Virus record (IMG/VR): IMGVR_UViG_3300026521_000003
Location: 62,001-126,000 of that record
Direction: 5' to 3' (one strand)
Length of the DNA stretch: 64,000 bases
A model generated the notes under the pieces. That model searched no databases, was not told where the DNA came from, and saw only the letters and a list, made by a program, of their open reading frames with translations. The translations under genes and the position numbers were made by a program. Below are positions 2,566-62,197 of this stretch, piece after piece. The stretch's first letter is position 1; each line of letters begins with the position of its first letter.

Positions 2566-4836
2566 TTAGTAACCTTGAATTACATATCTTATTTGTTCAG
2601 CATCGCCACTAGCTAACGAAATTTTTACAGTATTAACATCAATAACTTCCGTTACTACTAGATCGAATCTCCATACCGATTCAGATGCATCATATACTTG
2701 TACTGAAACATCAACAAATTCAGTATTTAAATTATGAGCGACAGTATAAGTGTCTGCCGCATCTTCTTCTGCTACTTCACCTTTAACATAACGATTTTCA
2801 ATATCATTGATTTTAGTATTTACTAAAGATGCAATATTATCAAGTGTATTCTTTAGTGTATCGGCATTTAATTCGATTGTTGGATTAACTATATTTGTAT
2901 CAGATTCTGTATATCCATCATACCCAACATAATTTGTACCATTACCAGAAGTTGTAGCAATCAAATTATCATAATTTGTTTTAATAGCACTATCTAAAAT
3001 ATTATCCGAATCATACAATGAAGTAGCTGATGTTATATATGTTGCATTGGAATTTGATGTATAAGTATCATCCGATATTCCTGCAGCGATATTAATATTG
3101 TCAATTCTTGTAGATAAAGCGTCGTCATTGTTAAATCTAGTAGTACTTTCATCATCAATAGCAGTCTGTAAATTTGTTTCTGCAGTAGTTGCTCTTGTTA
3201 CTTCACTATTTAAATTAGCATCAACTTCATTAATAGCATTTACTAATGTATCTTGTGCATCAGTTGTTAGATCTGATAAATCACCTATTTTACCATCAAC
3301 TTGAGATTCGATATTAGTAACTCGTATATCGATAGACGATATTGAATCCTCATTAGTTTTAATTGAGGTATCTAATAATACTGTAGCATTATGTACACTT
3401 GTTGCTGATGAAATATAATTTGTCAACGCTTCAACAACATACGTACCATCATCATTTAAACCTGCACCAGTTTCAACTCTATCAATTTCCGATTGTATTG
3501 CTGAATCAGCATTAATTCGGTTGGATACTTCACCATCTATATTAGAATCAACTTCATTAATAGCATTTACTAATGTATCTTGTGCATCAGTTGTTAGATC
3601 TGATAAATCACCTATTTTACTATCGATTTGAGTTTCTAAGTCCGTAATACGAGAATCTAATGATGCATCTGCATCACTTCTTGTTGTGGCTTCAGTATCA
3701 ATATTAGACTGCAAATTATCATCAGCATTAGTTCTATTTGTAATTTCTGTTGATAGATCCGATGATATAGTGTCTATGTCTGCACGTAATATATTATCAG
3801 CGGTATCAACATAATCCTCAGTTGCTACTTTTTTAAGGCTACCATCTGATTGAATTTCAACTTGATCAAGAGTTTCATTCCATTGTAATATTGTTGTTAA
3901 TCCTTCATTTCCTCTATCAACTTCAATACCTGCATTTTCAGTTGGATCCACATCACCAATACCATCATTTAATGTTATAATGTTATCAGCAACTTTTAAT
4001 GTTTCTGTTTCAATAGTGGTAGTTGTTCCACTTACTGTAAGATCACCCTGTATTATTAAATTATTAGAAAATGTTGTTTCTGCTGTTACAACTTGGGAGT
4101 CTGAAGATGTTTTATTTAAATAATTAGTTGATAAATCATCTACTATGTTTGAAATAGCAGTTGTATTAATATCTGTATTTGCATCTACTTCATTAATTGC
4201 AGCAACTAAGTTGGTCGTATCATCGGTAGTAAGTGCCGATATATCGCCTTCTACTGATGTTGCTCTAGACATTTCCGTATTAATACTTGCTGTATTAATA
4301 TCTGTATTTGCATCTACTTCATTAATTGCAGTAACTAAATTTGTTTTATCAGTTGTAGTTAATGTCGCTAAATCACCTTCTACTGATATTGCTCTAGATA
4401 TTTCAGTATTAATACTTGCTGTATTAATATCTGTATTTGCATCTACTTCATTAATTGCAGTAACTAAGTTGGTCGTATCATCCGTAGTAAGTGCTGATAT
4501 ATCCCCTTCTGTTGCTGTTGCTCTAGATATTTCAGAATCAATATTTGTTTGTAATGTTGTATCTGCAGAAGTTCTATCTACTATTTCTTGTTCTATAGCT
4601 TCAGTATTTGCTTCTACATCAGCACTATTATCGATACCGATAGGTTTAATTTCAACGTTTGTTCCATCAGCATCTAAAAAACCACCTTTAAATGTTTTAT
4701 CCGTATTATTAAACCATAAACGACCAACAGATTCAACACCATTTAATGTTGGATCTGATGTTAAACTTTCAAGTACTAAATTTGAAAATTTACTATTTTT
4801 AGCTAGTTCAGGATTATGTAATTTTATTTTAGCCAT
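2566..4836 (-). CDS. Tail fibre/whisker-like virion protein with internal LTT..NLVxAINEV repeats (756 aa)
   Basis: GGAG RBS. GRLWFN head, GDLTVSG..DNIITLN..NAGIEVDRG segment, five AINEVD repeats and a HNLNT C-terminal module. Paralogue of 53304-54626. Confidence 0.7.
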   Translation of the reverse strand: MAKIKLHNPELAKNSKFSNLVLESLTSDPTLNGVESVGRLWFNNTDKTFKGGFLDADGTNVEIKPIGIDNSADVEANTEAIEQEIVDRTSADTTLQTNIDSEISRATATEGDISALTTDDTTNLVTAINEVDANTDINTASINTEISRAISVEGDLATLTTTDKTNLVTAINEVDANTDINTASINTEMSRATSVEGDISALTTDDTTNLVAAINEVDANTDINTTAISNIVDDLSTNYLNKTSSDSQVVTAETTFSNNLIIQGDLTVSGTTTTIETETLKVADNIITLNDGIGDVDPTENAGIEVDRGNEGLTTILQWNETLDQVEIQSDGSLKKVATEDYVDTADNILRADIDTISSDLSTEITNRTNADDNLQSNIDTEATTRSDADASLDSRITDLETQIDSKIGDLSDLTTDAQDTLVNAINEVDSNIDGEVSNRINADSAIQSEIDRVETGAGLNDDGTYVVEALTNYISSATSVHNATVLLDTSIKTNEDSISSIDIRVTNIESQVDGKIGDLSDLTTDAQDTLVNAINEVDANLNSEVTRATTAETNLQTAIDDESTTRFNNDDALSTRIDNINIAAGISDDTYTSNSNATYITSATSLYDSDNILDSAIKTNYDNLIATTSGNGTNYVGYDGYTESDTNIVNPTIELNADTLKNTLDNIASLVNTKINDIENRYVKGEVAEEDAADTYTVAHNLNTEFVDVSVQVYDASESVWRFDLVVTEVIDVNTVKISLASGDAEQIRYVIQGY
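3220..3620. repeat. 74-bp identical direct repeat pair (3220-3293 and 3547-3620) within the fibre gene
   Basis: Both copies encode KIGDLSDLTTDAQDTLVNAINEVD; offset 327 bp, in frame. Confidence 0.9.
4162..4536. repeat. Three tandem 129-bp (43-aa) repeats within the fibre gene
   Basis: tgtattaatatctgtatttgcatctacttcattaattgcag recurs at 4162, 4291 and 4420. Confidence 0.9.
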
Positions 4837-4864
4837 TTTTAAATTTCTCCATTATAATTTATTA

Positions 4865-5311
4865 TTATTTATTAAGATGAAGAAATTTATCAATATTATA
4901 ATTTAATACTTCTACTGGTGTCATTTCCATTTTTATAGATTCAATCACATTATCATTACTATCAACAATAAAAAAAGCTGGAGTACCTTTTATATCATAA
5001 TTTGATGATAAATAGTCAAACATAGAAATATTTTTATTCCATACGTCCGAAATATCTTTATTCCAATCAATTTCAATATTATTTAAAGGTTGCCCAGATA
5101 ATAATTGATAGTATGCATTTAATGGATTTTTTGATTTAAATATTACTTGTATTGCTAATTCATCCATAGGACTAAATGGCGCCAATAGCAACTTACGAGT
5201 TAATGGAATTTTATCACAATCATTATTTTTTTGTAATTCTCTACAAACCGAACAATTCGGATTAGTTACAACTAATAATGACAAATCGGTTTTTTTATCT
5301 ATTATAATCAT
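4865..5311 (-). CDS. Thioredoxin-fold oxidoreductase (DsbC/DsbG-like pattern, no signal peptide)
   Basis: VVTNPNCSVC (CxxC) and IKGTPAFFIVD (cis-Pro loop). Start moved to ATG 5311 behind a GGGG RBS. Directly downstream of nrdA. Confidence 0.7.
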   Translation of the reverse strand: MIIIDKKTDLSLLVVTNPNCSVCRELQKNNDCDKIPLTRKLLLAPFSPMDELAIQVIFKSKNPLNAYYQLLSGQPLNNIEIDWNKDISDVWNKNISMFDYLSSNYDIKGTPAFFIVDSNDNVIESIKMEMTPVEVLNYNIDKFLHLNK

Positions 5312-12675: not shown

Positions 12676-15600
12676 ATGGGTTTAATCGTTAAACACGCAG
12701 ATGGGAGCGAATTCCTTAATATTGCGAATAAAACATATGATGATGTATCAACAAGTTTAAAATTGCCAGGTAAAGGTGTTTTAAACTGGGGTGAGGCATA
12801 TGTAAACAATTTTGTACACTTACTAGAAAATTTTGCTAGTTCAATTGAACCACAAAACCCACAAGTTGGTCAAATATGGTATAATACTGGTTCAGGTGTT
12901 TTATCAGTTTATACAATAGGACAAGAATGGGAAATAATTAATAAAGATACAGATATTGAAGCTAAATTTGATGCTTTAGTTACTGAATTACAAGAAAGTA
13001 ATGCAGGGACTATACCACCAACAGATGTGTCTATTGGTACTACTTGGTTTGATACAAATGTAAATGTATTAAAAGTTTTTAATGGTACTGAATGGGTTTC
13101 ATTTGGTTTTAATTCAATAGCATCTTTTATTCAACCTAGTGATAGTGAAGCATCAGATTTATGGTATGATAAGAATATTAATAATCTTAAAGTTTATGAT
13201 GGTTCACAATTCCAAAGATTAATCTCAACTATTGAAAGTACGAATCAACCAACTAATTCGCCGGTTGGTCAATTTTGGACAAATACCACAACAGGTCAAA
13301 TATTTATATATAAACAAGAACCATCTACTGGTGAATATTATTGGCAAGAATTAGGTGCAGAAATTGTTACTGAAGGTGATATTTTACCAACTATTGCTAA
13401 AACTGGTGCATTACATATAACCCGTACAACTTTTTCAAATATCCTATATATTAATAAAGGTACTAAAACTTCACCTGTATGGGTTGAAATTCCAGAATTT
13501 GGTGGTGCTATAAAATCTGTAAATGAACCAGTTGATGCTAAAGATGGTATGTTTTGGTTAGATGGTAATGATGTATTAAAAATTAGAAAATCTGGAGTAT
13601 GGACTGATATTGATCAGACAGCAATTTCATATATTTCTGAAACAATGCCAACTGATGCTAAAGATGGTATGGTATGGTTTGACACTTCAACTGGCTCTAT
13701 GAAAATTAAAGTTGGTAGTAATTGGGAAGCTGTACAAGATACAGGTTTAATTGAATACGGTGTAGCGCCAATTTCACCAAAAGAAGGACAATTATGGTTC
13801 GACAATACAAGATCCGAACTAAAGATTTTTAATGGTACTTCGTGGACGGTTGTTAATAATTCAAGCACTATTGTAAGTTACCAAACACCATTGGATGCTA
13901 CTGCCGGGCAATTATGGTTAGATACTACAAGTTCAGAATTAAAAGTTATGAAAGATGGGAGATGGGCATCTTTACCAGAAAATGCTAGAGCACACTTAAC
14001 AATTCCTGCTAGTCCTAAAAATGGTGACATGGCTTATGTTAATAATGCATTAAAAATCTATGATGGTTCTGATTGGAAAGATATTAATATAAATATTGAT
14101 AATAGTACAACAGGTGATGATGTATCAATTAATTATGATGAAATCTCACATGAAATAGTTATAGTTTCAGATGGTATTACAACAAGAGTACCTCTAGCAG
14201 TTAGTAGAGATGTTATTGTTGAAAATGTTGGTATAACATCTGATGTTGTTGAAGTTATACATCCAGATATAAGTGAAGGTGAAAGAAGAATTATTGATAT
14301 TCAAAAAGTTAATCTAAATAGATCATTTTTTGTTTTTAGAAATGGTAGATTTACAGATGATTATTATACAGATTCTCAAGATTTAATTCTTAATAGTGCT
14401 GCGGGTGATGATGAAATTGATATTTTACAATTTAATGGTGATATTTCTATAAATTATTTAGTTAAAAAATTCAAATCAACTATTAATGGTAATTTTACTA
14501 TTGATAACTATACTAGAACATTAGAAGAGCAAGAAGAATATGATATTGTTAAAGCCGAATATGATGCTAAGTTAGTTGAATTAATAGCACAGTATGGTGA
14601 TAATAGTTCTGAAAGTGACTTAACTGATGCTGATTGGGCTATATTGGATGAAATTGAAAGTAGATTCCCTATTAAAACATCAAATCAAATAGCAGATTTA
14701 TCTTTAGGATCTATTATAGTATTTAAAGAAGGTATTTTTATACCTACAGACGATTTAACAATCAATGAATCAAATGAAAATAAGATTATTATACCTAATA
14801 CTAATGCAGGGGAAATTTATACAATCATACAGTTAATTGCTGGTAATGATTATAAATCATCATTCTTCAGTCGAGAAAACTCTTTTACTATTGGAGCAGT
14901 TGAAGATACAACAGAATCAACTCTAAATGTTGCGGGTAAAATGATGACAGATATGCTTCAAGCTGCTTCAAAAAATACTGCTGGATATGGTGAAGTTGAT
15001 GTCGATTATATTTTTAATGATACTGAAAAAACTGTTACTTTTAGTTTAATGGATATTGATGCAGATTATCATTTCTTCGTAACAAGAAATAATCTGTTTG
15101 TTTCTCCAGTAAATTATACAGTCAATACAACTAATAATACATTAACAATGCATGCTAATTCTTTAGATGAAATACGATTTTTTCAATTCTACTTACCACA
15201 TAATTATGTTCCTATTGAATTTAATTATAAAGAGGCTTTAGCTGCAAATGAAGGTTGGATAACAATAGAGTTAAATCAAGATTTTGACTTAAATAGCCCT
15301 TTATTAGTATATAGAAATGGTATGTTACAAGAATCAGCAAACATAAATATTATTACTCAAGAAACACTTGTCGATGATAATGGTATTACATATACTGTTG
15401 ATGGATTAAGAAAAGTACAAATTTTTGGAGATGCAGAAACAAACGATGAATCTATATCTGGAGTACAAATAGGTGATATAGTAACTGTTATGCAAGTTTC
15501 ACAACCAGAATTCTATAATATTTATTTAGAAGAATTTGGTGCTACAGTTGATGGGTTTAATATTTTTACGTTCAATGAAATAGATAGTCAAAAAGATATT

Positions 15601-25400: not shown

Positions 25401-28400
25401 TTCTTAAATTTTCATCAATTATATCAATAGTATAAAAATCTAATAGATTTATACGAATTATATCCTTGCTAAAAATGTGTATATCATATAATAAAGAATC
25501 TCTAACTCTTGCATTATGCATATCTGAACCAGGTTGATTAGCTCTATAAAATTTTTGTGAAATTAAATCACCGTATGGATCTATTGGTAACATTCGCATA
25601 AACCCGAAATCTACACGTATAACACCCAATGCATCGATTAATAAAGAATCTACCATATTCGCAATTCTATCTAGATCAGCAGAGTTATGATAAAATTCAT
25701 CGTATGCAAACTCATTATGTCCTGGTATAAATGTTCCATTTTCAGTTATAAATGATTCCCTTTGTCGTCCTGCCCAAATATGTATTTCTGTATGGATTGT
25801 ATCTATTGGACATATCTGAACATTTTCACTTTCCACTATATCTAATTTAGCAATAAATTTATCTTTTAATGAAATATCACTCATATCTAATATTTCCGTT
25901 TCAAACCCTTGTTCTAATAGTGAATCATAGACCATAGTACTTATATCCTGACCTAATATTGTAGGATTACTTTGATGATAATATTCATCAATAGCAAATT
26001 CGTCATGCCCAGGAATATCAAGTACATCATAAAGAATACCTATATCAGTCCAAATAGAGTCTAATATAGCTACATTTAACTGTTCATAAAACTCATGTAA
26101 AATAGTTTGATGCATTAAATCTTTCATACCGATTAATGTTGTTTGATCTTCAGGCCCAGAATATTCATCTAAACCGTATAAATCCATAGGTAGTTGTTCC
26201 ATATCATAAAAGCGAATATTAAATTCCGTATCAATATCAATCAAATAATCTTCTATAACATTTGTTTCTGCAATATCATCAATATTATTCATAATATCAA
26301 TAGTAGGTATATAATCTATAAAATGTGATTCAACAACATTATCTTGTTCAAAAATATTTTGTTTAATATGAAAATAATCATCAATATAAGTGTCGACTAC
26401 TTTCTCAAATTCATTTTCAGGTATGCATTCCCACCATAAATTTGCTAAATTAGGTGGAGTATATATAGATTCAGGTCTCTGTTTCCAAATTTCTTTATTT
26501 AGAACGTACCAATCATCATCTATACCATACGTTTCATCATCCATAGCCATTAAATCATGCCCACCAACTTTTACACTTCTATCATAATCATATGGTATTT
26601 CATCATGAGCTCCACATAGTTTTAACCCTTCAGATGGAAATATTACATCAATTCTAGATGATATTATAGAACGATCTAGTGTCTGTATTCTAATCTTTTC
26701 ACTAAATGCAGAAATAATATCTATAATATTTCTATCTTCAACTAAAACATCTGCTTCTTTAGAAACTGCTTCTGCTGATGAACTTTCCATAATTTTAATA
26801 GTAAATATAATTTTATCTAAAACAGTATGAAAAGGTAAGAATTCATCAAATAAATCTTGGACTATTTTCTCATAAATATCATAAGTCGCATCACCTTTAC
26901 TGTCTTTTATATTAATAGCCATAGACAAATCCAACATTGAAGAAGCAATTACATCTTCTGTAAATAATGCTAATATCTTAGTTATTAAATCATAACGTTT
27001 AATATTGAATAAGTAATCAAAATAATGTTCTACTGGTTGTTTAATACTATCTAAATATGTCAATTCTTCAAAATCGGTTATTTCAAGATTAATAAATGAG
27101 TTATATACTAAATTTGAATCAATTATCATTTTATAAATTTCATCTGTGTTACTACCCAAATCTGCAAGAAGAGTATGTTCTTTTATTTTATTATATTCCA
27201 CAGATAAATTCGGGTGATCAAATTGCTTTAATTCATAATATATTACATTTTTAAATTCTTCAACGGTCTTTACATCATTCATAAGAATATAATTTGGTAA
27301 AAACCTCTCAACAAACCATCGAATTATAACTAAATTAACACTTAATAAATCAAATCCCTGTTCAATAGATAATCGATTTAATACATCTAATACCTCAAAT
27401 AAATAATCTACGGGTTTATTTAGTTCATATTTAATATTATCTTCATATTCATTGTAATTATCAGAAAAACTAACATATGAATTAGTAACCATACTATAAT
27501 CTAGCAATCTATAATCTTTTTTAGAAAAAACACCATCGTCAATAATAGGGCGGATTAATAATAATGGTTCTTTCCAATCAACAGACATTTTAATAAATTC
27601 ATTTATATTTAGAATATCATATTTAAATGGTTTTTCAAAATGCACATGATTATTTTCTTGAATATCATTCCAATCTGAATAATTTATAATCGGTTTATAG
27701 GTTTCAATAGTATCTTTTTTTATCTTTTCTAATTCATCCGTAAAAATATAAAATAACCGTTCTTTGTCATATTGATTAAATGTCATCATTGAAACTTCAG
27801 ACACAATATCATTATCGGCATTTTCTTTTATAAAATCAACGATAACTTTTAAATTATTCTCTATCCACACATTATGAATTAAATAATAATCGAATTGTTC
27901 TAGTAAATAATCATCTTCAAGATATTTTCTTATATATGCTATTAATATATTGTGTATATTATTCGTATCTAATGAAAAATGCTCATAATTATTATTTTTA
28001 AAAATATCAATCAAATCATCATATGAACCAGAAATTAATTTCGTCTCCATTAGGTCCGCAACTAATTCTTTTAACGTATCAACAATATAGATTGAAGATG
28101 GTAATATAGTTGAAACTCTAGCCCATTCAGATATAAATTTATTACGTTGAACCATATAAACTGGTGAAACATTTATATCATTCGATATAGCTTTTAAATT
28201 TGACTTTAAATATGATTCTAACCCTTTTAAAGATGAAGTATTAGTTTTAAACATTAAATATGGTTCTTCTTCTAAATTTTGAGTTTTTGCATTATCAATA
28301 TCTATATCTAATTGCTCACCTAATAAATTATGCTCTTGTGTATTATTATTTTTATCTTGGCCTCTTCCTAACATATATACATTATCAGGAATCATCATCG

Positions 28401-56052: not shown

Positions 56053-57360
56053 TTACAAATATGAATATTCAATCTCAGAAATTATTTCATTTGTTTCAAT
56101 AATTTTGAACTGTCCACCCATATCTTTAAATTTATTTATCTTATTTATAGTTGATTCAATTGTTTCACTAATATTAGATTTATTAATAGGTGAATATAAT
56201 AAATATTGATTCGAGATAGAAACAATAGGCTGACCTTCAAAATTTTCCATAACTAAGACTTTATGTTTATTTGATTTTGGAATATCCAATGTCGATATAA
56301 TTTCTTTAAATAGATTATCAACAACAATCATATTCTCAATTTCTAAATTTTCAGATTTAAGATTACGTATAATTGTTTCTAAATATTTTTCTTCATTCTT
56401 AATTTCAGTTCCAAAAATTTTTGCTTGTTCTAATCTCTTTTTTGCTAAAGAGCGATATTTCATTTCAATAGGGGATAATTCAATTGCAGGTAGTTCTTCA
56501 TTAGAAATAATTTTTGTATCTAAATCATACGGTATATTATCGGTATAATCAACAAGTATTGATTTTTGTGATTCAAGTTTAAATTTAACAGCAACAACTT
56601 CAAGTTTTTTATCTATTCGTTCTTTAATAACCTCATAAGTTACTTTAATATCCGATTTATCATTAACTTCTTGTACGGCTTTTTTCAATATATCTCTGTT
56701 AAAATTAGCCCATTTTTGTAAAGATGGTTTATTAACAATATCAACATTTAAAATAGCTTTTAATATATTTATCTCTATACGTTTTTCATAAGACCCAACA
56801 TAATCTTTTAAAAGTTCATATAATAGTTTTGAATATTTCGATTTTAATCCCACTTGAATCTGTAATGAAAATTTAGTATAATAATTTTTTATATTTAAAA
56901 ACATTATTAATAATTCTGGTTCTATCCAGACTTTAACTCTTTTACTTGTAGTTTGTTTATCCTTTGACCAAGCTATTTTTCTTAGAAAATGAAATAATAT
57001 CGATTCTTGAGTTTTATTTTTATGTAATACATTTGTTAAAACTTGTATTTTGGATATTTCATGTAAATTTTTTATTATTTCATTATAATACCCATTTTTA
57101 TATTTACCCAGTACATCCGAAATCGACTGCAAATTAATTTCAAAATGATTTAGTGACGCCCATTCATAAATCTCTTCTTCTGTTAATTCTTGCTGCAACA
57201 TAATATCAGAAATAAAGAAAAACATAGTCCCAATTAAATCAACTTGAATTGGTGTTAAAACAGCAAATTCTTCTTTTATAAAATCTTTGTAATATAAAAC
57301 TTGACATAATTCTGATGGTTTTCTTAATTCTAAATTTTTTGTTACTTCTTTTTTACTCAT
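56053..57360 (-). CDS. repB: Plasmid-type replication initiator protein (Rep_3 / RepB family, tandem winged helix)
   Basis: LKSKYSKLLYELLKDY...I.INILKAILN...WANFNRDILKKAVQEVNDKSDIKVTYE is the Rep_3 WH2 signature. Start moved to ATG 57360, 8 nt behind AAGG. Confidence 0.85.
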   Translation of the reverse strand: MSKKEVTKNLELRKPSELCQVLYYKDFIKEEFAVLTPIQVDLIGTMFFFISDIMLQQELTEEEIYEWASLNHFEINLQSISDVLGKYKNGYYNEIIKNLHEISKIQVLTNVLHKNKTQESILFHFLRKIAWSKDKQTTSKRVKVWIEPELLIMFLNIKNYYTKFSLQIQVGLKSKYSKLLYELLKDYVGSYEKRIEINILKAILNVDIVNKPSLQKWANFNRDILKKAVQEVNDKSDIKVTYEVIKERIDKKLEVVAVKFKLESQKSILVDYTDNIPYDLDTKIISNEELPAIELSPIEMKYRSLAKKRLEQAKIFGTEIKNEEKYLETIIRNLKSENLEIENMIVVDNLFKEIISTLDIPKSNKHKVLVMENFEGQPIVSISNQYLLYSPINKSNISETIESTINKINKFKDMGGQFKIIETNEIISEIEYSYL

Positions 57361-57410
57361 ATGTTCAACCTTATTTTTTTTGTATTTATTAGATTTTACA
57401 ATCACAATTA

Positions 57411-57939
57411 AAATTACACAATCTAATCACAGTTTTTTATAGTTTATTTAATATTTTTAAATTTTATACCTATATTTATATGACATTTTATTTTAATTTT
57501 AAATTACACAATCTAATCACAGTTTTTTCTTTTTGGTTCTTAATATATTAAATTATATCAAAAATAACTCAAAAAATAATTCTTAGTTAAATTTAATGTA
57601 GTTTATAGCTATTTTTCAGAAGAAAAAAACTTAAAAAAAAAATCTTAGTTATGGCATTTTTTATTTTATTTATATTTTTATATAATTTATTCTTATATAT
57701 TGAACTCATTAATAGTCAATAAAATATATAATAAACTATATTTTAACTAAAAAATATTTTTTGAGTTATCTAAAAAACTAAAAATAAATACGTAAGTTAA
57801 AATTTAAAAATTTAACTAAGAATTATTTTTTGAGTTAAAAAATGGGTTTTTTGCCGCATTTTAAGACTATAAAAATAAGGTGTTTTTTTTGGTTCACAAT
57901 CTAATCACGAAAACTACACAATCTAATCACAGTTTTTTT
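57411..57939. repeat. Iteron-like family A: CACAATCTAATCAC core x4 (57417, 57507, 57895, 57917)
   Basis: Three copies extend to about 28 bp (AAA(T/C)TACACAATCTAATCACAGTTTTTT). The last pair has a 22-bp period. All are in the same orientation, upstream of rep. Confidence 0.88.
57565..57837. repeat. Family B: 25-bp TAACT-N15-AGTTA sites x5, including a perfect 30-bp inverted repeat (57565-57594 / 57808-57837)
   Basis: Copies start at 57565, 57627 (21/25 identity), 57744 (23/25, inverted), 57775 (arms only) and 57813 (perfect, inverted). Confidence 0.85.
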
Positions 57940-58157: not shown

Positions 58158-59213
58158 ATGTCAAAGAAAATCACAATGAGTACAGATTGGCATTTTGGTA
58201 AATCAAATGGAAGGTTTGACAATATTATTTTAAATGGTATTATTGAACAATGTAATTATGCAAAAGATAATAATATCAAAGTTATGATTAATCTTGGTGA
58301 TACATTAGATGTAAAGCAATCAATTACTACTAGTACTATGAATTATTTAGCTAAAGCATTCCAGTTAATAAATGAAACATTCGATAAAGTTTATGTATTG
58401 GTTGGTAATCATGATATGTCCAAAAAAACTTATAATAATGATGGACATAATTTACATATCTTTTCTGGTTATAGTAATATTGAGGTTATTGACACTCCAA
58501 AAATAATTTCAATATTCGATTCAGATTTTTATTTTATGCCTTATTTCCCAAATGATTATCTCAAAAATCATACTTTTGAAAAAGCTAGATATTTGTGTGC
58601 TCATATTGAAGTACAAGGATTTATGTTAAATCAATTTGTTAAAGCTGAAGATGGTTTGAATATGCAGGCTATAACAAATATATATGACAATGTTTTTTTA
58701 GGTCATTTTCATAAGCGACAATCTAGAGGGAATGTATCATATATTGGTAATATGTGTAGATTTTTTTATGGTGAAAATGATGAAGAGCGTGGTTGGACTA
58801 TCTTAGATGTTGAAAATAATGATTATGAATTTGTTGAATACCAACACCCTAAAATGTATAAATTTAAATTATCAACATTAATGAATTTAGATGAAGATTT
58901 AAATGATATATTTGAACCAGGTGATAATCTTAAACTGGTTATTGATAAACAATTAAAATATTCTGAATTAGAGGAGTTTAAATCAAAACTAATTTTGGAT
59001 TATAAAATTAATGATTTAGTATTAGACGACCAGTTTTATGCATTTGATATTGATGAAATAGATGATGAAGATGAAATAGATGATAATGTTACAGATTTAG
59101 ACCCTAGTTATATGGATTATCTATTAACAGAAATGGGGAAGATTATCACAGACGATAATGCCATAGAAGCATTAGAATATCTTAGAGAAAAATCTAAAGA
59201 TTATCAGGAATAA
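58158..59213 (+). CDS. gp47: Recombination endonuclease subunit, gp47/Mre11/SbcD-like
   Basis: Calcineurin-like phosphoesterase motifs DWHFG, GDTLD, GNHD, HIE and GHFH. Confidence 0.95.
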   Translation: MSKKITMSTDWHFGKSNGRFDNIILNGIIEQCNYAKDNNIKVMINLGDTLDVKQSITTSTMNYLAKAFQLINETFDKVYVLVGNHDMSKKTYNNDGHNLHIFSGYSNIEVIDTPKIISIFDSDFYFMPYFPNDYLKNHTFEKARYLCAHIEVQGFMLNQFVKAEDGLNMQAITNIYDNVFLGHFHKRQSRGNVSYIGNMCRFFYGENDEERGWTILDVENNDYEFVEYQHPKMYKFKLSTLMNLDEDLNDIFEPGDNLKLVIDKQLKYSELEEFKSKLILDYKINDLVLDDQFYAFDIDEIDDEDEIDDNVTDLDPSYMDYLLTEMGKIITDDNAIEALEYLREKSKDYQE

Positions 59214-59285: not shown

Positions 59286-61127
59286 ATGAAGATTAAATTT
59301 CGTAAAATTGAAATACAAAATTTTTATAGTTATGGTGATAAACAGGAAGTAGACTTAGATCAATTTAAAAGTACAGTTGTTTTAATAGATGGTATAGATA
59401 AAGATACAGAGGGATCAAAAATTGGTTCTGGTAAATCATCATTCCTTGCAGCAATAACATATGCATTATTTGGTGAAACCGTTTCAAATGTAAAAGCTAA
59501 TGAGATAGTAAATTATATAAAAGGTAAAAATGCATTAGTTGTTTTAATATTTGAAATGAATAATACTCTTTTTAAAATTGAAAGGGGTAGAAAACCAAAT
59601 ATATTAAATATCTATCAAGAAATTGATAGAGATGAAAATGATGATATTCAATGGGAAAATATATCAAGAGCTGATATAAAAGATAATGATAAACTTATTG
59701 TTTCATTAATAAAAATCAATTTTGAAACATTTTTACAAACATCATTATTTTCTGTAGCTTCAGAGCATAATAAACCTTTTTTAAATATGACTCCATCAAA
59801 TCAAAAAAAAGTTCTTGAAAATATTTTTAATTTTGATTTATTTAATAATATGATTAATGAGATAAAAGATGATGTTCGTGACAAACAAGTTATTAGAGCT
59901 GAATTAGAATCTTCATTAAGAGAAGTTCAAATCTCAAATGAACAAATAGAATCACAAATAGAAAGACTGAAGGAATCTTCAGATAAATTTGAAAAACGTA
60001 GAAATAAACGTATTAAAGAACTTGAAGAAAGTATAGTTTTTTATAATAATATTGATATTGAAGAAGAAAAAGATAAATTTGCATTTATAGATGAGTTAAA
60101 AGAACATAAAACTAATATTACTTCAACTATTTCGGAATTGAAAATTGAGTTAAAAGATATTCAAACTGAATTATCGAGAGTTGATAGGGAAATCGAATTG
60201 TTAGTCAATGATTATCAATCAGAAGAAGATAATAATAAGAGTTTAAGAGGTAATATTTGTCCAACTTGTCATCAAGATTGGGAAGATCCAGATGCAATAA
60301 TAGCAAGTGATAATAAATTAAAAAAAATAGGTTCTGAAATAATTTCTTTTGAGAAAAGCTTAAATGAATTTGAGGTAGTTGAACAAAAAATTCTAAAAAA
60401 GATTAAAGATAAAAAAAGTATTTTGTTTGAAATTAAAGAAGCTATAGATGAAGTAGAAACACAAATTGATAAAAAAGAATTGGATAATATTGATATTATA
60501 TTATCTAATATTAAGAAAGAACTAAAAAATGAAATAAATCAAGAAAACCATTATCTTATGGAAATAGAAGCAAATAAATCACTACTTCGAGAAATAGATA
60601 CGGAAACATTAGACAAAGTTGATAGTTGGATTCAAAATATTAAAGCATTTATTAAATTATCTGAGGATCCTAAGACAAGAGGGAAATTTTTAAGAAAATT
60701 TATAAAACAATCTAATGAAATTTTACGAGGGTTTAAAAAATTAATACCGGATTATAATATTCATATTCAATTCAATCCTGACTTTACCATTAGAGTTATG
60801 AAGTTAGGTAAAGAAGTTAATCCTGCATCTTTATCAAATGGTGAAAAGAGGATTGGAAATATAATGATAATGATGGCATTAATGAAAGTATTTAAACTTA
60901 AAAATAACGTTGAATTTAATGCTATTTTTATGGATGAAGTACTTGATAGTGGTATTAATGGTGCCTTATTAGAAAGTGTTTACACTTTTATAAAAAATGT
61001 AGCAAAAGAAGAACAAATGAGAGTTTATTTAATTTCACATAGAGAGGAAATTAAAGAAAAAGTTAAAGAAGTTATAATGGTTACAAAATCAAGAGGCATA
61101 TCAACTATTGAAATAAATCCTATGTGA
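59286..61127 (+). CDS. gp46: Recombination ATPase subunit, gp46/Rad50/SbcC-like
   Basis: Walker A GSGKSS, coiled coil with CPTC zinc hook, signature LSNGEKR, Walker B IFMDE and ISH. Confidence 0.96.
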   Translation: MKIKFRKIEIQNFYSYGDKQEVDLDQFKSTVVLIDGIDKDTEGSKIGSGKSSFLAAITYALFGETVSNVKANEIVNYIKGKNALVVLIFEMNNTLFKIERGRKPNILNIYQEIDRDENDDIQWENISRADIKDNDKLIVSLIKINFETFLQTSLFSVASEHNKPFLNMTPSNQKKVLENIFNFDLFNNMINEIKDDVRDKQVIRAELESSLREVQISNEQIESQIERLKESSDKFEKRRNKRIKELEESIVFYNNIDIEEEKDKFAFIDELKEHKTNITSTISELKIELKDIQTELSRVDREIELLVNDYQSEEDNNKSLRGNICPTCHQDWEDPDAIIASDNKLKKIGSEIISFEKSLNEFEVVEQKILKKIKDKKSILFEIKEAIDEVETQIDKKELDNIDIILSNIKKELKNEINQENHYLMEIEANKSLLREIDTETLDKVDSWIQNIKAFIKLSEDPKTRGKFLRKFIKQSNEILRGFKKLIPDYNIHIQFNPDFTIRVMKLGKEVNPASLSNGEKRIGNIMIMMALMKVFKLKNNVEFNAIFMDEVLDSGINGALLESVYTFIKNVAKEEQMRVYLISHREEIKEKVKEVIMVTKSRGISTIEINPM

Positions 61128-61160
61128 TTTATTGTAAAATAAGTATGAGAAGGATATAAA

Positions 61161-61811
61161 ATGAAATTTTCAGATCTAGATTTAGATATACCTTCTAAAT
61201 TGTCAAATGATATTAGGTATAAATTTATAAGAGCATCGGTTAAAAATAATGGGAATTATCAACCTCATCCAGCAGGTATATATCTATATAAGAATATTCC
61301 TCAATTTAATAAAATTGCTGTAAATGATTATAAATTTATGGAAGATAATAATTATCAAAAAATTGATATTTTGAATAATACATTTTTAGATAATATTACA
61401 AATGATGAAATGGACAAATTTATAGATTTAATTGAAATGGAAGAAATTGATTGGAAAAAGCTTTATACATATGATGAACCTTATCAACTTAGTAAATATC
61501 CATCAATATTAAAAGAATTTCAAGTTTCATCAGTATTTGATATTGCAATGGTTTTATCTATAATAAGACCTGGATCAATTAAAAAATATGATGCTTTAAA
61601 AAAAGCTATGAAAACAAAAAAAAAGATTAGTAAAGATATAAAGTATTATGATATTTTAAAAGACACGTATGGAGTTCCAATTTTTAATGAACAATATAAA
61701 GAGATAGGTATTGATGATGGTGTGTATAGATATAAAAAACCACACGCTATCGGTTATGCCTATGTATTGTTGATTGATTTTTTAAAAAAAAGTCATAAAA
61801 TTAAGGAATAA
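61161..61811 (+). CDS. dnaE: Minimal DNA polymerase III alpha (DnaE) catalytic-core protein (216 aa)
   Basis: SDLDLD, HPAGI, KIDILN, YQL, IIRPG, LKDTYGV..FNEQ and YKKPHAIGYA occur in DnaE order. Confidence 0.78.
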   Translation: MKFSDLDLDIPSKLSNDIRYKFIRASVKNNGNYQPHPAGIYLYKNIPQFNKIAVNDYKFMEDNNYQKIDILNNTFLDNITNDEMDKFIDLIEMEEIDWKKLYTYDEPYQLSKYPSILKEFQVSSVFDIAMVLSIIRPGSIKKYDALKKAMKTKKKISKDIKYYDILKDTYGVPIFNEQYKEIGIDDGVYRYKKPHAIGYAYVLLIDFLKKSHKIKE

Positions 61812-61845: not shown

Positions 61846-61853
61846 TATAAATA
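61846..61853 (+). promoter_or_regulatory. T4-type late promoter TATAAATA upstream of HU
   Basis: Exact consensus 60 bp upstream of the ATG at 61913. Confidence 0.45.
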
Positions 61854-61912: not shown

Positions 61913-62197
61913 ATGACAAAAGCAGATATGGTAGTTCAACTACAAGAAATTATTGGTGAAGAAAAAGTTTCAAAAGCAGAATGTGAAAGAATCTGGAATG
62001 GTTTAATCGAAATTATTGCAGAAGAGGTAAAAGATGGTGGTGAAGTAAAATTTGGTTCACTATTTAAAGTTTATAAAAAACATAAAAATGCTAGAAAAGT
62101 AAGAAATCCGAGAACTGGCGAAACTTTCATGAAAGAAGCTAGAGATGAACTAGGATGTAAAGTTATGAGAGAAGGTAAATACCTTATTCAAGACTAG
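61913..62197 (+). CDS. hup: HU/IHF-family DNA-binding protein
   Basis: MTKADMV, EVKFGSLFKV and ARKVRNPRTGE arm motif. Confidence 0.92.
   Translation: MTKADMVVQLQEIIGEEKVSKAECERIWNGLIEIIAEEVKDGGEVKFGSLFKVYKKHKNARKVRNPRTGETFMKEARDELGCKVMREGKYLIQD

What the first reader, a model, noticed from the sequence alone, without database searches (positions are those of the whole stretch)
61161..61811. 216-aa stripped-down DnaE that keeps the catalytic triad
Seen: DnaE motifs in the right order (SDLDLD, HPAG, KIDIL, IRPG, TYGV..FNEQ, KKPHA..YA) within only 216 aa. It has its own RBS and stop, and I see no adjacent fragments. Known: E. coli Pol III alpha is 1160 aa with catalytic D401/D403/D555; the PHP, most of the fingers, clamp-binding and OB domains are absent here. 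Inferred: this is a non-processive nucleotidyltransferase (primer synthesis or extension, gap fill, end processing or DNA modification) working with the neighbouring gp46/gp47 or Rep, not the replicase. I recall similar short DnaE-like genes from other large phages, so the family may be known, but its activity is unclear to me.
Basis: partly seen in the sequence, partly recalled or inferred. Interest (0 to 1): 0.65.

Follow-up and report, generated by a model that had tools for sequence, protein, structure and literature searches.

The report
C-terminal half of split mini-DnaE
The 216-aa gene is real and DnaE-like, but it is only the C-terminal half of a two-gene, stripped-down DNA polymerase III alpha core already described by sequence analysis in T4-like jumbo phages; its nucleotide-binding half lies 19 kb downstream, outside the window.

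Summary
The ORF at 61161-61811 (+) exists as described, and its DnaE motifs are real. They are invariant in 32 aligned relatives and map onto E. coli Pol III alpha D401/D403/D405, K553/D555, R639-P-G, TYG..EQ and NKSH. The AlphaFold model superposes on Pol III alpha 398-780 (Z 11-12).

It is not a self-contained enzyme. The other half of the palm (GS nucleotide-binding motif, E. coli 281-394) is a separate 168-aa ORF 19 kb downstream (genome 142544-143050). Nothing is lost at the break. A complex prediction scores 0.88 against 0.01 for controls. A single-chain 375-aa version exists in a metagenome. Four distant cultured jumbo phages carry the same two genes split at the same point.

This is the "minimal split DNA polymerase III alpha" that Iyer et al. 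2021 described in group 2.2 jumbo phages (PHROGs 11778 and 11127). No biochemistry was found. PHP, thumb, clamp-binding and OB parts are truly absent.

A family-B polymerase is present but fractured by a split intein. The gp46/gp47 adjacency is specific to this clade.

The parts
61161..61811 (+). C-terminal half of the split minimal Pol III alpha (216 aa). It holds the Mg-binding Asp strand D5/D7/D9, the K67-x-D69 strand and condensed fingers (RPG, TYG..EQ, KKxH..GYA).
   Evidence: VIA-align gives Z 11.5, rmsd 5.3 A over 205 residues to E. coli alpha 398-780, and Z 11.8, rmsd 4.6 A over 194 residues to Taq alpha 463-838. Motif map.
61147..61154 (+). Shine-Dalgarno-like GAGAAGGA, 6 nt before the ATG. 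The gene starts only 33 nt after the gp46 stop, so it is probably co-transcribed with gp47-gp46.
   Evidence: Read directly from the sequence. The M-K-[FL]-S-D-L-D start is conserved in relatives.
58158..59213 (+). gp47/SbcD-like nuclease subunit (351 aa). An upstream neighbour in this clade only.
   Evidence: phrog_100 E 3e-57 and PF00149. Synteny in a relative at 61% identity.
59286..61127 (+). gp46/SbcC-like ATPase subunit (613 aa), immediately upstream.
   Evidence: phrog_77 E 6e-86, AAA_23 and SMC_N.
61913..62197 (+). HU-like DNA-binding protein (94 aa), immediately downstream. It is preceded by a T4-type late-promoter box TATAAATA at 61846-61853.
   Evidence: PF00216 E 8e-16. TATAAATA position and enrichment upstream of starts.
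56053..57405 (-). Rep3-family replication initiator (450 aa), transcribed divergently from the gp47-gp46-C-half block.
   Evidence: PF01051 Rep3_N E 1.7e-10 and PF21205 Rep3_C E 4.8e-9. phrog_4402.
57383..57938 (.). Probable iteron-type origin. It has four direct copies of ACACAATCTAATCAC and 30-nt perfect inverted repeats.
   Evidence: 4 matches against 0 expected in 100 shuffles. Repeat families D1 and I1.

Best explanation
The 216-aa ORF is the C-terminal subunit of a two-gene, minimal C-family (Pol III alpha-like) polymerase.

Shown:
- It carries the metal-binding aspartates (D5, D7, D69; also D9) and a condensed fingers module.
- The N-terminal half of the same Pol-beta-like palm (helices plus the M-R-G-S-G triphosphate-binding loop) is a separate 168-aa protein. 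It is encoded 19 kb downstream at genome 142544-143050, outside the window.
- The cut falls between E. coli residues about 394 and 398, and nothing is lost.

Inferred with good support: the two proteins co-fold into a heterodimer of about 384 aa. The DxDxD strand of the C-half pairs with the strand that precedes the GS loop of the N-half. Neither half can be active alone.

Inferred from family knowledge: the heterodimer is a template-directed DNA polymerase. It has no thumb, no PHP/proofreading module and no clamp-binding or OB tail, so it would be distributive. It acts as an accessory polymerase beside the phage's T4-type family-B replicase. Likely jobs are short-patch synthesis at forks, primer or invading-3'-end extension during origin- or recombination-dependent initiation, or gap filling. 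The exact job is unknown.

My confidence is about 0.9 for the identity and split architecture, about 0.75 for an obligate heterodimer, about 0.5 for a template-directed DNA polymerase with an accessory replication or repair role, and at most 0.2 for any one specific task.
For: Identity:
- PF17657 and phrog_11778 for the C-half. PF07733, above its cut-off, and phrog_11127 for the N-half.
- The top 14 Foldseek hits for the C-half are all Pol III alpha, at probability 1.0.
- VIA-align gives Z 11-12 to the Taq and E. coli alpha chains, and Z 7.5 to PolC.
- N-half residues 75-168 match E. coli alpha 281-394 (Z 7.3-7.5, rmsd 2.7-2.8 A, about 91 residues) and M. tuberculosis DnaE1 (Z 8.6, rmsd 2.7 A, 89 residues). 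The next unrelated hit is Z 3.4.
- Residue map.

One enzyme in two pieces:
- GS-to-DxD spacing is 37 aa across the break, 39 aa in E. coli and 42 aa in a natural single-chain 375-aa homologue, P0236. That gene is complete inside its contig.
- Complex prediction: ipSAE 0.88 (three runs, 0.87-0.88) against a best control of 0.01. That mark was reached by 58 of 80 solved complexes and 2 of 110 mismatched pairs. Runs agree in at least 94% of contacts and partner pLDDT is at least 91. There are about 160 contacts, and C-half residues 8-11 touch N-half 132-134.

Conservation:
- Catalytic and GS residues are invariant.
- 266 clusters at 50% identity match, mostly proteins of 183-219 aa.
- Both halves are separate genes ending at the same break point in Paride/PA5oct-like, fHe-Yen9-04, Phosso and SCTP-2, 35-224 kb apart.
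- Three IMG/VR relatives have the halves 17-23 kb apart.

Context:
- The genes sit in replication and recombination modules.
- Neither half has a T4-type late promoter box.
- A metatranscriptome contig covers 61262-61732.

Prior description: Iyer et al. 2021, PMC7824862.
Against: - No biochemical or genetic data exist for any member. Three literature searches returned only the 2021 computational paper on this enzyme.
- The complex score is a model's own confidence. It may partly reflect memory of intact Pol III alpha structures.
- Loss of the thumb and about 130 residues of distal fingers could abolish ordinary primer-template binding. DNA-templated synthesis is therefore assumed, not shown.
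- Residues 1-74 of the N-half form an extra alpha/beta domain with no recognisable relative. Its role is unknown.
- The RNA-library contig does not prove transcription, because DNA carry-over is possible.
- The N-terminal (exonuclease and motif A) part of the family-B polymerase was not found in this 87%-complete record. The claim that a complete other replicase exists here is therefore incomplete.
Confidence: 0.8

Rival explanations
1. One reading: a self-sufficient 216-aa nucleotidyltransferase that works alone, or only with gp46/gp47 or Rep.
For: It has its own RBS and stop, no flanking DnaE pieces, and an intact Asp triad. In this clade it follows gp47-gp46 and lies near a Rep3 initiator and iterons.
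Against: It lacks the GS triphosphate-binding loop and the helices that form half of the palm fold, and its catalytic strand begins at residue 5. When modelled alone, only the best of five AlphaFold models is confident (mean pLDDT 80.0; the others 57-73), and residues 1-6 are below pLDDT 50. A perfectly complementary partner gene co-occurs in every sufficiently complete relative. The partner docks with score 0.88 against 0.01 for controls. A fused natural form exists. The gp46/47 adjacency is absent in distant members.
Confidence: 0.04
2. Decayed remnants: the two ORFs are non-functional leftovers of a once full-length dnaE broken by rearrangement.
For: The gene is in pieces, most DnaE domains are missing, and large phage genomes do accumulate fractured genes (the PolB in this genome).
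Against: Lengths are constant (212-229 aa and 166-174 aa) and the break point is identical. Catalytic and GS residues stay invariant across sequences down to about 25% identity, in phages of Pseudomonas, Yersinia, Sinorhizobium and Salicola and in vent metagenomes. That pattern requires long-term purifying selection.
Confidence: 0.03
3. It is the phage's main replicase: the mini Pol III alpha heterodimer, recruited to the clamp by other factors, copies the genome, and the family-B enzyme is secondary.
For: The family-B polymerase needs protein trans-splicing, and its N-terminal part was not located in this record. The N-half gene lies next to gp55 and a probable gp45 clamp here, and 2-3 genes from the clamp loader in other phages. 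The C-half lies near primase and helicase in others.
Against: It has no thumb, no clamp-binding motif, no OB/tau-binding tail and no fused proofreader. According to Iyer et al., every phage that carries it also keeps a T4-type family-B polymerase. The record is only 87% complete, so the missing PolB part may lie off the contig.
Confidence: 0.07
4. The heterodimer has a non-replicative chemistry: template-independent tailing, RNA or primer synthesis, or synthesis of a nucleotide signal, as in other Pol-beta-fold nucleotidyltransferases.
For: The Pol-beta superfamily is functionally versatile. Loss of the thumb argues against ordinary duplex tracking. No activity has been measured for any member.
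Against: The conserved motifs outside the palm (RPG, TYG..EQ, KKxH..GYA) are the fingers motifs shared with cellular DnaE, which Iyer et al. class as the DNA-template-binding subdomain. Gene neighbourhoods are replication and recombination modules, not RNA-repair or defence modules.
Confidence: 0.1

Closest known systems
Minimal split DNA polymerase III alpha of 'group 2.2' (T4-related) jumbo phages (Iyer, Anantharaman, Krishnan, Burroughs and Aravind 2021, Viruses 13:63, PMC7824862). PHROG 11778 is the C-half and PHROG 11127 the N-half.
   Same: Two standalone proteins encoded by distant genes: an N-terminal NTP-binding unit and a C-terminal Mg- and template-binding unit. No other Pol III domains are present. 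It co-occurs with a family-B polymerase and T4-like core genes (gp13, gp15, gp46, gp47, gp55). Homologues occur in PA5oct-like, RaK2/Eneladus-like, XacN1, Atu_ph07 and SCTP-2 phages.
   Different: This copy is only 24-33% identical to the cultured-phage members and comes from a 27% GC phage of hydrothermal-vent and epibiont communities. Here the C-half follows gp47-gp46, near a Rep3/iteron origin, instead of lying between UvsW and primase/helicase.
Bacterial replicative Pol III alpha (DnaE; E. coli 1160 aa, PDB 2HNH; Taq 2HPI/3E0D/4IQJ; M. tuberculosis DnaE1 5LEW)
   Same: The same Pol-beta-like palm with D401/D403/D555, K553 and the RGSG loop. The same fingers motifs (RPG at 639, TYG..EQ at 680, NKSH at 757). 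Structural match at Z 11-12.
   Different: 384 aa in two chains against about 1160 aa in one. There is no PHP domain, no thumb (DxD-to-HxGG is 31 aa against 110 aa), about 54 aa is deleted between TYG and NKSH, and nothing follows E. coli residue 780. There is no beta-clamp motif, HhH, OB or tau-binding domain.
Natural single-chain mini Pol III alpha (P0236, 375 aa, metagenomic contig L025)
   Same: The same minimal domain content and motif spacing, and the same C-terminal end about 15 aa after KKTH. Its N-terminal 180 residues match the N-half profile.
   Different: One polypeptide, with a linker of about 10 residues where the phage enzyme is cut. It is known from a single 2.4-kb contig of unknown origin.
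Cyanobacterial split-intein DnaE (dnaE-n / dnaE-c)
   Same: A C-family polymerase encoded by two distant genes.
   Different: From established knowledge, the cyanobacterial halves carry a split intein, are spliced into a full-length roughly 1200-aa protein, and are cut in the distal fingers. Here neither half has any intein sequence or room for one. The cut lies inside the palm between the GS loop and DxD, so assembly must be non-covalent.
Fractured phage genes joined by naturally split inteins, seen here in the same genome's family-B polymerase
   Same: An essential replication enzyme scattered over the genome.
   Different: The PolB pieces carry N- and C-intein halves that would restore motif C, DTD|S. 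The mini Pol III alpha halves do not.

Membership tests
C-family DNA polymerase catalytic core (Pol III alpha / DnaE, Pfam PF07733 + PF17657) | Pol-beta-like palm with three catalytic acidic residues (E. coli D401, D403, D555) and K553 | tested here: met
   D5, D7, D69 and K67 align by motif and by structure and are invariant in 32 relatives.
C-family DNA polymerase catalytic core (Pol III alpha / DnaE, Pfam PF07733 + PF17657) | GS (R-G-S-G) triphosphate-binding loop in the N-terminal palm | tested here: not met
   Absent from the 216-aa ORF itself. It is supplied in trans by the 168-aa ORF at genome 142544-143050 (M135-R-G-S-G, invariant; PF07733 25.5 bits against a cut-off of 23.9)..
C-family DNA polymerase catalytic core (Pol III alpha / DnaE, Pfam PF07733 + PF17657) | Fingers motifs (RPG, TYG..QEQ, NKSH..AYA) | tested here: met
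   PF17657 E 2.4e-8, 33.9 bits against a cut-off of 22. hhalign places residues 116-182 on E. coli 619-693. KKPH at 192 corresponds to NKSH at 757.
Full-length replicative DnaE | N-terminal PHP domain | tested here: not met
   PF02811 has no match at E <= 10 anywhere in the 289,880-bp record, while the control rings in 14 of 14 genomes.
Full-length replicative DnaE | Thumb domain (E. coli 433-510) | tested here: not met
   DxD-to-HxGG spacing is 31 aa against 110 aa in E. coli.
Full-length replicative DnaE | C-terminal HhH/beta-binding, OB and tau-binding modules | tested here: not met
   The protein ends 24 aa after KKPH. PF14579 has no match in the genome. The OB-fold profile was not searched separately.
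Minimal split Pol III alpha of group 2.2 jumbo phages (Iyer et al. 2021) | Two standalone proteins, an N-terminal NTP-binding unit and a C-terminal Mg/template-binding unit, encoded by distant genes | tested here: met
   168-aa and 216-aa ORFs 19 kb apart. The same arrangement holds in 4 cultured phages and 3 IMG/VR relatives.
Minimal split Pol III alpha of group 2.2 jumbo phages (Iyer et al. 2021) | Sequence membership in the phage-specific families | tested here: met
   phrog_11778 E 1.2e-19 over profile positions 7-187 of 197. phrog_11127 E 2.8e-10 over positions 24-170 of 171. tblastn hits in 46 phage records.
Minimal split Pol III alpha of group 2.2 jumbo phages (Iyer et al. 2021) | Accompanied by a T4-type family-B polymerase and T4-like replication and late-transcription core | tested here: inconclusive
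   PolB motif B, motif C and thumb are present in two intein-bearing pieces. Homologues of gp46, gp47, gp55, gp13 and gp15 are present. The PolB exonuclease and motif A part was not found in this 87%-complete record.
Minimal split Pol III alpha of group 2.2 jumbo phages (Iyer et al. 2021) | The two units reconstitute one active enzyme | not testable with these tools
   Only predicted: ipSAE 0.88 against a best control of 0.01, a mark reached by 58 of 80 solved complexes and 2 of 110 mismatched pairs. A natural fused form exists. No biochemistry is available.
Split-intein DnaE (cyanobacterial type) | Intein halves at the junction that ligate the two exteins | tested here: not met
   Neither half has an Intein or Hint match in Pfam. 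The N-half ends at FWNN and the C-half starts at MKFSDLD, flush with the DnaE sequence.

The most novel reading that the evidence does not exclude
The two-gene mini Pol III alpha is an obligate heterodimeric, thumb-less DNA polymerase with a dedicated step in T4-like jumbo-phage replication that the family-B holoenzyme cannot do. One example is extending RNA primers or invading 3' ends at the origin or at recombination intermediates before hand-off to the replicase. It would then be the smallest natural C-family catalytic core (about 384 aa). That would make it a tractable model for how this polymerase family arose, and a second, unrecognised polymerase at phage forks.
Probability: 0.3. Interest if true: 0.7.

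Novelty: new member of a known kind. Interest (0 to 1): 0.4.

Why it matters
The family is widespread: 266 clusters at 50% identity, found in phages of Pseudomonas, Erwinia, Yersinia, Salmonella, Xanthomonas, Agrobacterium and Sinorhizobium and in vent communities. It is under strong purifying selection, and as far as I could find it has never been assayed.

It pairs a bacterial-type polymerase core with an otherwise T4/archaeo-eukaryotic-type replisome. It also shows that the Pol-beta-like palm of C-family polymerases can be cut between the nucleotide-binding and metal-binding halves and still be kept for long evolutionary times.

For annotation, the practical lesson is that the 216-aa and 168-aa genes should be named as two subunits of one enzyme, not as 'DNA polymerase' fragments or hypothetical proteins. 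The existence of a natural fused 375-aa form gives an easy construct for biochemistry.

Tried and rejected
- Single-sequence phmmer of either half against PDB sequences found nothing useful. The family profiles gave only weak fingers matches (E 0.0024) and nothing for the N-half. Structure comparison was needed.
- Six-frame search with the full-length phage DnaE profile phrog_405 found nothing, although hmmscan of the ORF does hit it (E 1.5e-5).
- Foldseek with the isolated N-half gave no significant hit. VIA-align on the same candidates did.
- I looked for the missing PolB motif A and exonuclease part. PF03104 gave none. A regex hit 'DVASMYPS' at genome about 239.5 kb lies in a small paralogous ORF with no PolB profile support, so I rejected it as chance.
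- tblastn with the fHe-Yen9-04 'exonuclease subunit', a DnaQ-like protein, gave nothing.
- Sigma-70 promoter and terminator scanning is uninformative in this 27% GC DNA: 37 sites found against 44 expected.
- I considered whether the conserved C-terminal 'LLIDFLKN' could be a T4-type clamp-binding tail. I rejected this because it aligns with the DnaE helix 'YQTLWLKA' that follows NKSH..AYA and contacts the N-half in the model.
- The ESM-Atlas feature search on N-half residues 1-78 returned only noise-level scores (0.84).
- The PA5oct omics paper and a 2026 jumbo-phage review say nothing about this enzyme.
- No alternative genetic code was needed: table 11 gives 95.5% coding.
- No reads-tool refusals occurred.
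Full report
**1. The observation**

The window is bases 62001-126000 of a 289,880-bp IMG/VR phage record. CheckV rates it 87% complete. It is 27.4% GC, and the standard code gives 95.5% coding.

The ORF at 61161-61811 (+) encodes 216 aa. It has a GAGAAGGA ribosome-binding site and an in-frame TGA 15 nt upstream. It matches Pfam DNA_pol3_finger (PF17657, E 2.4e-8, above the curated cut-off) over residues 115-182. It matches PHROG 11778, 'DNA polymerase', a 197-position profile, over its full length (E 1.2e-19).

In 32 aligned relatives (47-94% identity, 203-229 aa) these residues are invariant: S4, D5, D7, D9, K67, D69, R136, P137, G138, G171, K192, K193 and H195. Independent metagenome assemblies from other studies bridge the gp46/ORF junction without differences.

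**2. What the 216 aa correspond to**

Comparison with E. coli DnaE (fetched as L008) gives this map:

| Phage C-half | E. coli Pol III alpha |
|---|---|
| FSDLDLDI (3-10) | MPDFDVDF (399-406) |
| HPAG (36) | HAGG (511) |
| QKIDIL (66-71) | VKFDFL (552-557) |
| RPG (136) | RPG (639) |
| TYG..EQ (169) | TYG..EQ (680) |
| YRYKKPHAIGYAY (189-201) | YGFNKSHSAAYAL (754-766) |

The AlphaFold2 model has mean pLDDT 80. All 14 of its top Foldseek hits are Pol III alpha, at probability 1.0.

VIA-align results are:
- Taq alpha 463-838: Z 11.8, rmsd 4.6 A, 194 residues.
- E. coli alpha 398-780: Z 11.5, rmsd 5.3 A, 205 residues.
- PolC: Z 7.5, rmsd 4.8 A, 195 residues.

Spacing shows what is missing. DxD to HxGG is 31 aa against 110 aa, so the thumb (E. 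coli 433-510) is gone. TYG to NKSH is 23 aa against 77 aa. The protein stops 24 aa after KKPH, where E. coli has 400 more residues. The ORF is therefore the second half of the palm plus a condensed fingers module. It starts five residues before the first catalytic Asp.

**3. The partner**

A six-frame search of the whole record with PF07733 found one more DnaE piece at genome 142811-143047. It lies in a 168-aa ORF at 142544-143050 (+), 19 kb downstream and outside the window. It matches PF07733 at 25.5 bits (cut-off 23.9) and PHROG 11127, 'DNA polymerase'.

Its C-terminal part, LMRGSGVASFIFYLIGLNKVNPIKFGLDYKNFWN (134-167), aligns with E. coli 361-393, [33 protein letters not shown]. Its model has pLDDT 87.6. 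Residues 75-168 superpose on:
- E. coli alpha 281-394: Z 7.3-7.5, rmsd 2.7-2.8 A, about 91 residues.
- M. tuberculosis DnaE1 310-414: Z 8.6, rmsd 2.7 A, 89 residues.

All nine top rows are C-family polymerases, and the next row has Z 3.4. The cut therefore falls between E. coli residues about 394 and 398. GS-to-DxD spacing is 37 aa across the break against 39 aa in E. coli. Neither half carries intein sequence. Residues 1-74 of the N-half form an extra alpha/beta domain with no recognisable relative.

**4. Evidence that the two are one enzyme**

(a) The complex prediction scored ipSAE 0.88 in three runs (0.87-0.88), against a best control of 0.01.
- That mark was reached by 58 of 80 solved complexes and 2 of 110 mismatched pairs.
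- Runs agree in at least 94% of contacts, and partner pLDDT is at least 91.
- There are about 160 contacts, and the DxDxD strand (C-half 8-11) lies against N-half 132-134, just before the GS loop.
- This supports binding but does not show it. Memory of intact Pol III alpha structures may contribute.

(b) An exhaustive profile search of 1.84 billion representatives gave 266 clusters at E <= 1e-3.
- I ran it because the claim about fused forms rests on absence.
- Most hits are standalone proteins of 183-219 aa, and there are some full-length DnaE of 800-1100 aa.
- One hit, P0236 (375 aa), is a single-chain form of the same minimal enzyme. Its residues 90-180 match the N-half profile, a linker of about 10 residues follows, and then come DFDID, HGVG, KIDLL, RPG and KKTH at the same spacing.
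- The gene lies wholly inside its contig.

(c) Both halves co-occur.
- All four cultured phages tested carry the N-half as a separate 169-182-aa frame that ends at the same profile position. These are Paride (PA5oct-like), fHe-Yen9-04, Phosso and SCTP-2, and the halves lie 35-224 kb apart.
- Three IMG/VR relatives have it 17-23 kb from the C-half. The misses are small fragments, or the C-half is at the contig edge.

**5. Already known**

Iyer et al. 2021 (Viruses 13:63, PMC7824862) describe this enzyme in 'group 2.2' jumbo phages. [quoted passage not shown] It is split into an N-terminal NTP-binding protein and a C-terminal Mg- and template-binding protein, encoded by distant genes, and it accompanies a family-B polymerase. 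They suggest it may synthesise one strand or act in repair, and may resemble an ancestral state.

Some GenBank records annotate the genes as 'DNA polymerase' or 'DnaE-like DNA polymerase III alpha'. My literature searches found no other paper on it and no experiment. The library does not hold all journals.

**6. Context**

In this clade the order is: Rep3-family initiator (-), a 750-bp gap, gp47, gp46, C-half, a TATAAATA box, HU, then gp13- and gp15-like virion genes. The gap holds four iteron-like repeats and 30-nt inverted repeats.

The N-half is preceded by a UvrD-type helicase. It is followed, with an ATGA overlap, by a gp55-like late sigma factor and then by a 243-aa protein that may be the gp45 clamp. 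The clamp assignment rests on an Atlas feature match only.

In distant members the C-half lies between a UvsW-type helicase and primase plus gp41/DnaB helicase. The N-half lies two or three genes upstream of the clamp loader. The constant theme is the replisome module. The gp46/gp47 adjacency is clade-specific.

TATAAATA, the T4 late-promoter box, is enriched just upstream of starts: 40 of 127 copies lie within 60 nt of a start. It precedes HU but neither polymerase half, which suggests pre-late expression.

A biofilm metatranscriptome has a 472-nt contig inside the gene (61262-61732). It has no substitutions and one extra A in an A-run. This is suggestive only, because DNA carry-over cannot be excluded. 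The phage occurs in hydrothermal-vent, epibiont and biofilm metagenomes from six studies.

**7. Other polymerases**

No family-A polymerase was found. A family-B polymerase is present, but fractured:
- Genome 4449-5252 (267 aa) holds motif B (NSVYG) and ...ISDTD. An N-intein follows, with block A SVTKDATIET and block B TEDH (PF14890, E 2.4e-6).
- Genome 25479-26633 (384 aa) starts with a C-intein, ...NNILVHN|SCYF, and continues into the palm and thumb.
- Trans-splicing would rebuild motif C, DTDS.

The exonuclease and motif A part was not found in this 87%-complete record. A DnaQ-like DEDDh exonuclease ORF (292 aa) lies at genome 285202-286080.

**8. Mechanism**

- **Shown:** sequence and fold homology, the complementary split, conservation and co-occurrence.
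- **Inferred:** a non-covalent heterodimer rebuilds the Pol-beta-like active site. The N-half supplies the GS loop and the K/R163 region that bind the triphosphate. The C-half supplies the aspartates, K67 and the fingers.
- **Inferred from family knowledge:** it performs templated dNTP addition. It would be distributive, because it has no thumb or clamp motif, and non-proofreading. It would serve as an accessory polymerase beside PolB, in gap filling, primer or D-loop extension, or origin firing. No specific task can be chosen from the data.

**9. Verdict**

This is a new, divergent member of a known kind that has been described only computationally. Interest is moderate. What this analysis adds:
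- the residue-level map onto E. coli Pol III alpha;
- the predicted interleaved interface between the two halves;
- the conserved break point;
- the natural fused form;
- the clade-specific synteny.

Noticed in passing
Outside the window: genome (G000:C1) 4449-5252 (+) and 25479-26633 (+) = L003:1372-2175 and L006:1357-2511: The phage's family-B DNA polymerase is a fractured gene joined by a naturally split intein. Piece 1 ends ...ISDTD and is followed by an N-intein (block A SVTKDATIET, block B TEDH). Piece 2, 21 kb away, begins with a C-intein ...NNILVHN|SCYF. Splicing would restore catalytic motif C, DTDS. The exonuclease and motif A part was not found in the record.
   Followed up: partly
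window 57383-57938: A probable iteron-type replication origin lies between the Rep3-family initiator gene (56053-57405, -) and gp47. It has four direct copies of ACACAATCTAATCAC (0 expected by chance). It also has 30-nt perfect inverted repeats at 57565-57594 and 57808-57837.
   Followed up: partly
window 61846-61853 and genome-wide: The T4 late-promoter box TATAAATA is enriched just upstream of gene starts: 40 of 127 copies lie within 60 nt of a start, although only about 5% of the genome is non-coding. One copy precedes the HU gene. A gp55-like late sigma factor is encoded at genome 143050-143667.
   Followed up: partly
L025:1066-2193 (protein P0236) and L026:35-1186 (protein P0232): Natural single-chain minimal Pol III alpha proteins occur in metagenomes. 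P0236 (375 aa) is the fused equivalent of the two phage halves. P0232 (383 aa) is closer to cellular DnaE, also lacks the thumb and everything after the NKSH helix, and sits beside REase-, Metallophos- and HD-domain genes. Its 5' end is 35 nt from the contig edge, so it may be truncated.
   Followed up: partly
Outside the window: genome 285202-286080 (+) (L024:1087-1965) and 13089-13220: Two DnaQ/RNase T-type DEDDh exonuclease matches. The first is a 292-aa ORF with a complete exonuclease domain in its C-terminal half. A similar standalone 'DNA polymerase exonuclease subunit' lies a few genes from the C-half in Yersinia phage fHe-Yen9-04. It could be a proofreader acting in trans for either polymerase.
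   Followed up: no
Outside the window: genome about 236.7-243.6 kb (L021:2768-9631): A run of paralogous ORFs of unknown function share C-terminal tails: ...KDIFIF, RDLFIF, ASIFIF or KDIFVF in one set, and ...HPEWLI, YPERFI or YPELLV in another. They have no Pfam or PHROG family. One carries a chance-level DVASMYPS match to PolB motif A.
   Followed up: no
Outside the window: genome 143739-144470 (+) (L001:2429-3157): A 243-aa protein directly after the gp55-like sigma factor resembles, by language-model features (0.95), viral clusters of which some members carry the gp45 sliding-clamp C-terminal domain. The N-half of the mini polymerase would then sit beside the late sigma factor and the clamp.
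   Followed up: partly
N-half residues 1-74 (genome 142544-142765): A confidently predicted small alpha/beta domain (pLDDT above 90) precedes the palm half. It has no structural or sequence relative, and it contacts the C-half beta-sheet in the complex model. A region of similar length precedes the palm in distant phage N-halves and in the fused form.
   Followed up: partly
whole window: Near-identical DNA occurs in hydrothermal-vent, epibiont and biofilm metagenomes from six studies, so the phage is recurrent in vent-associated communities. The host was not determined.
   Followed up: no
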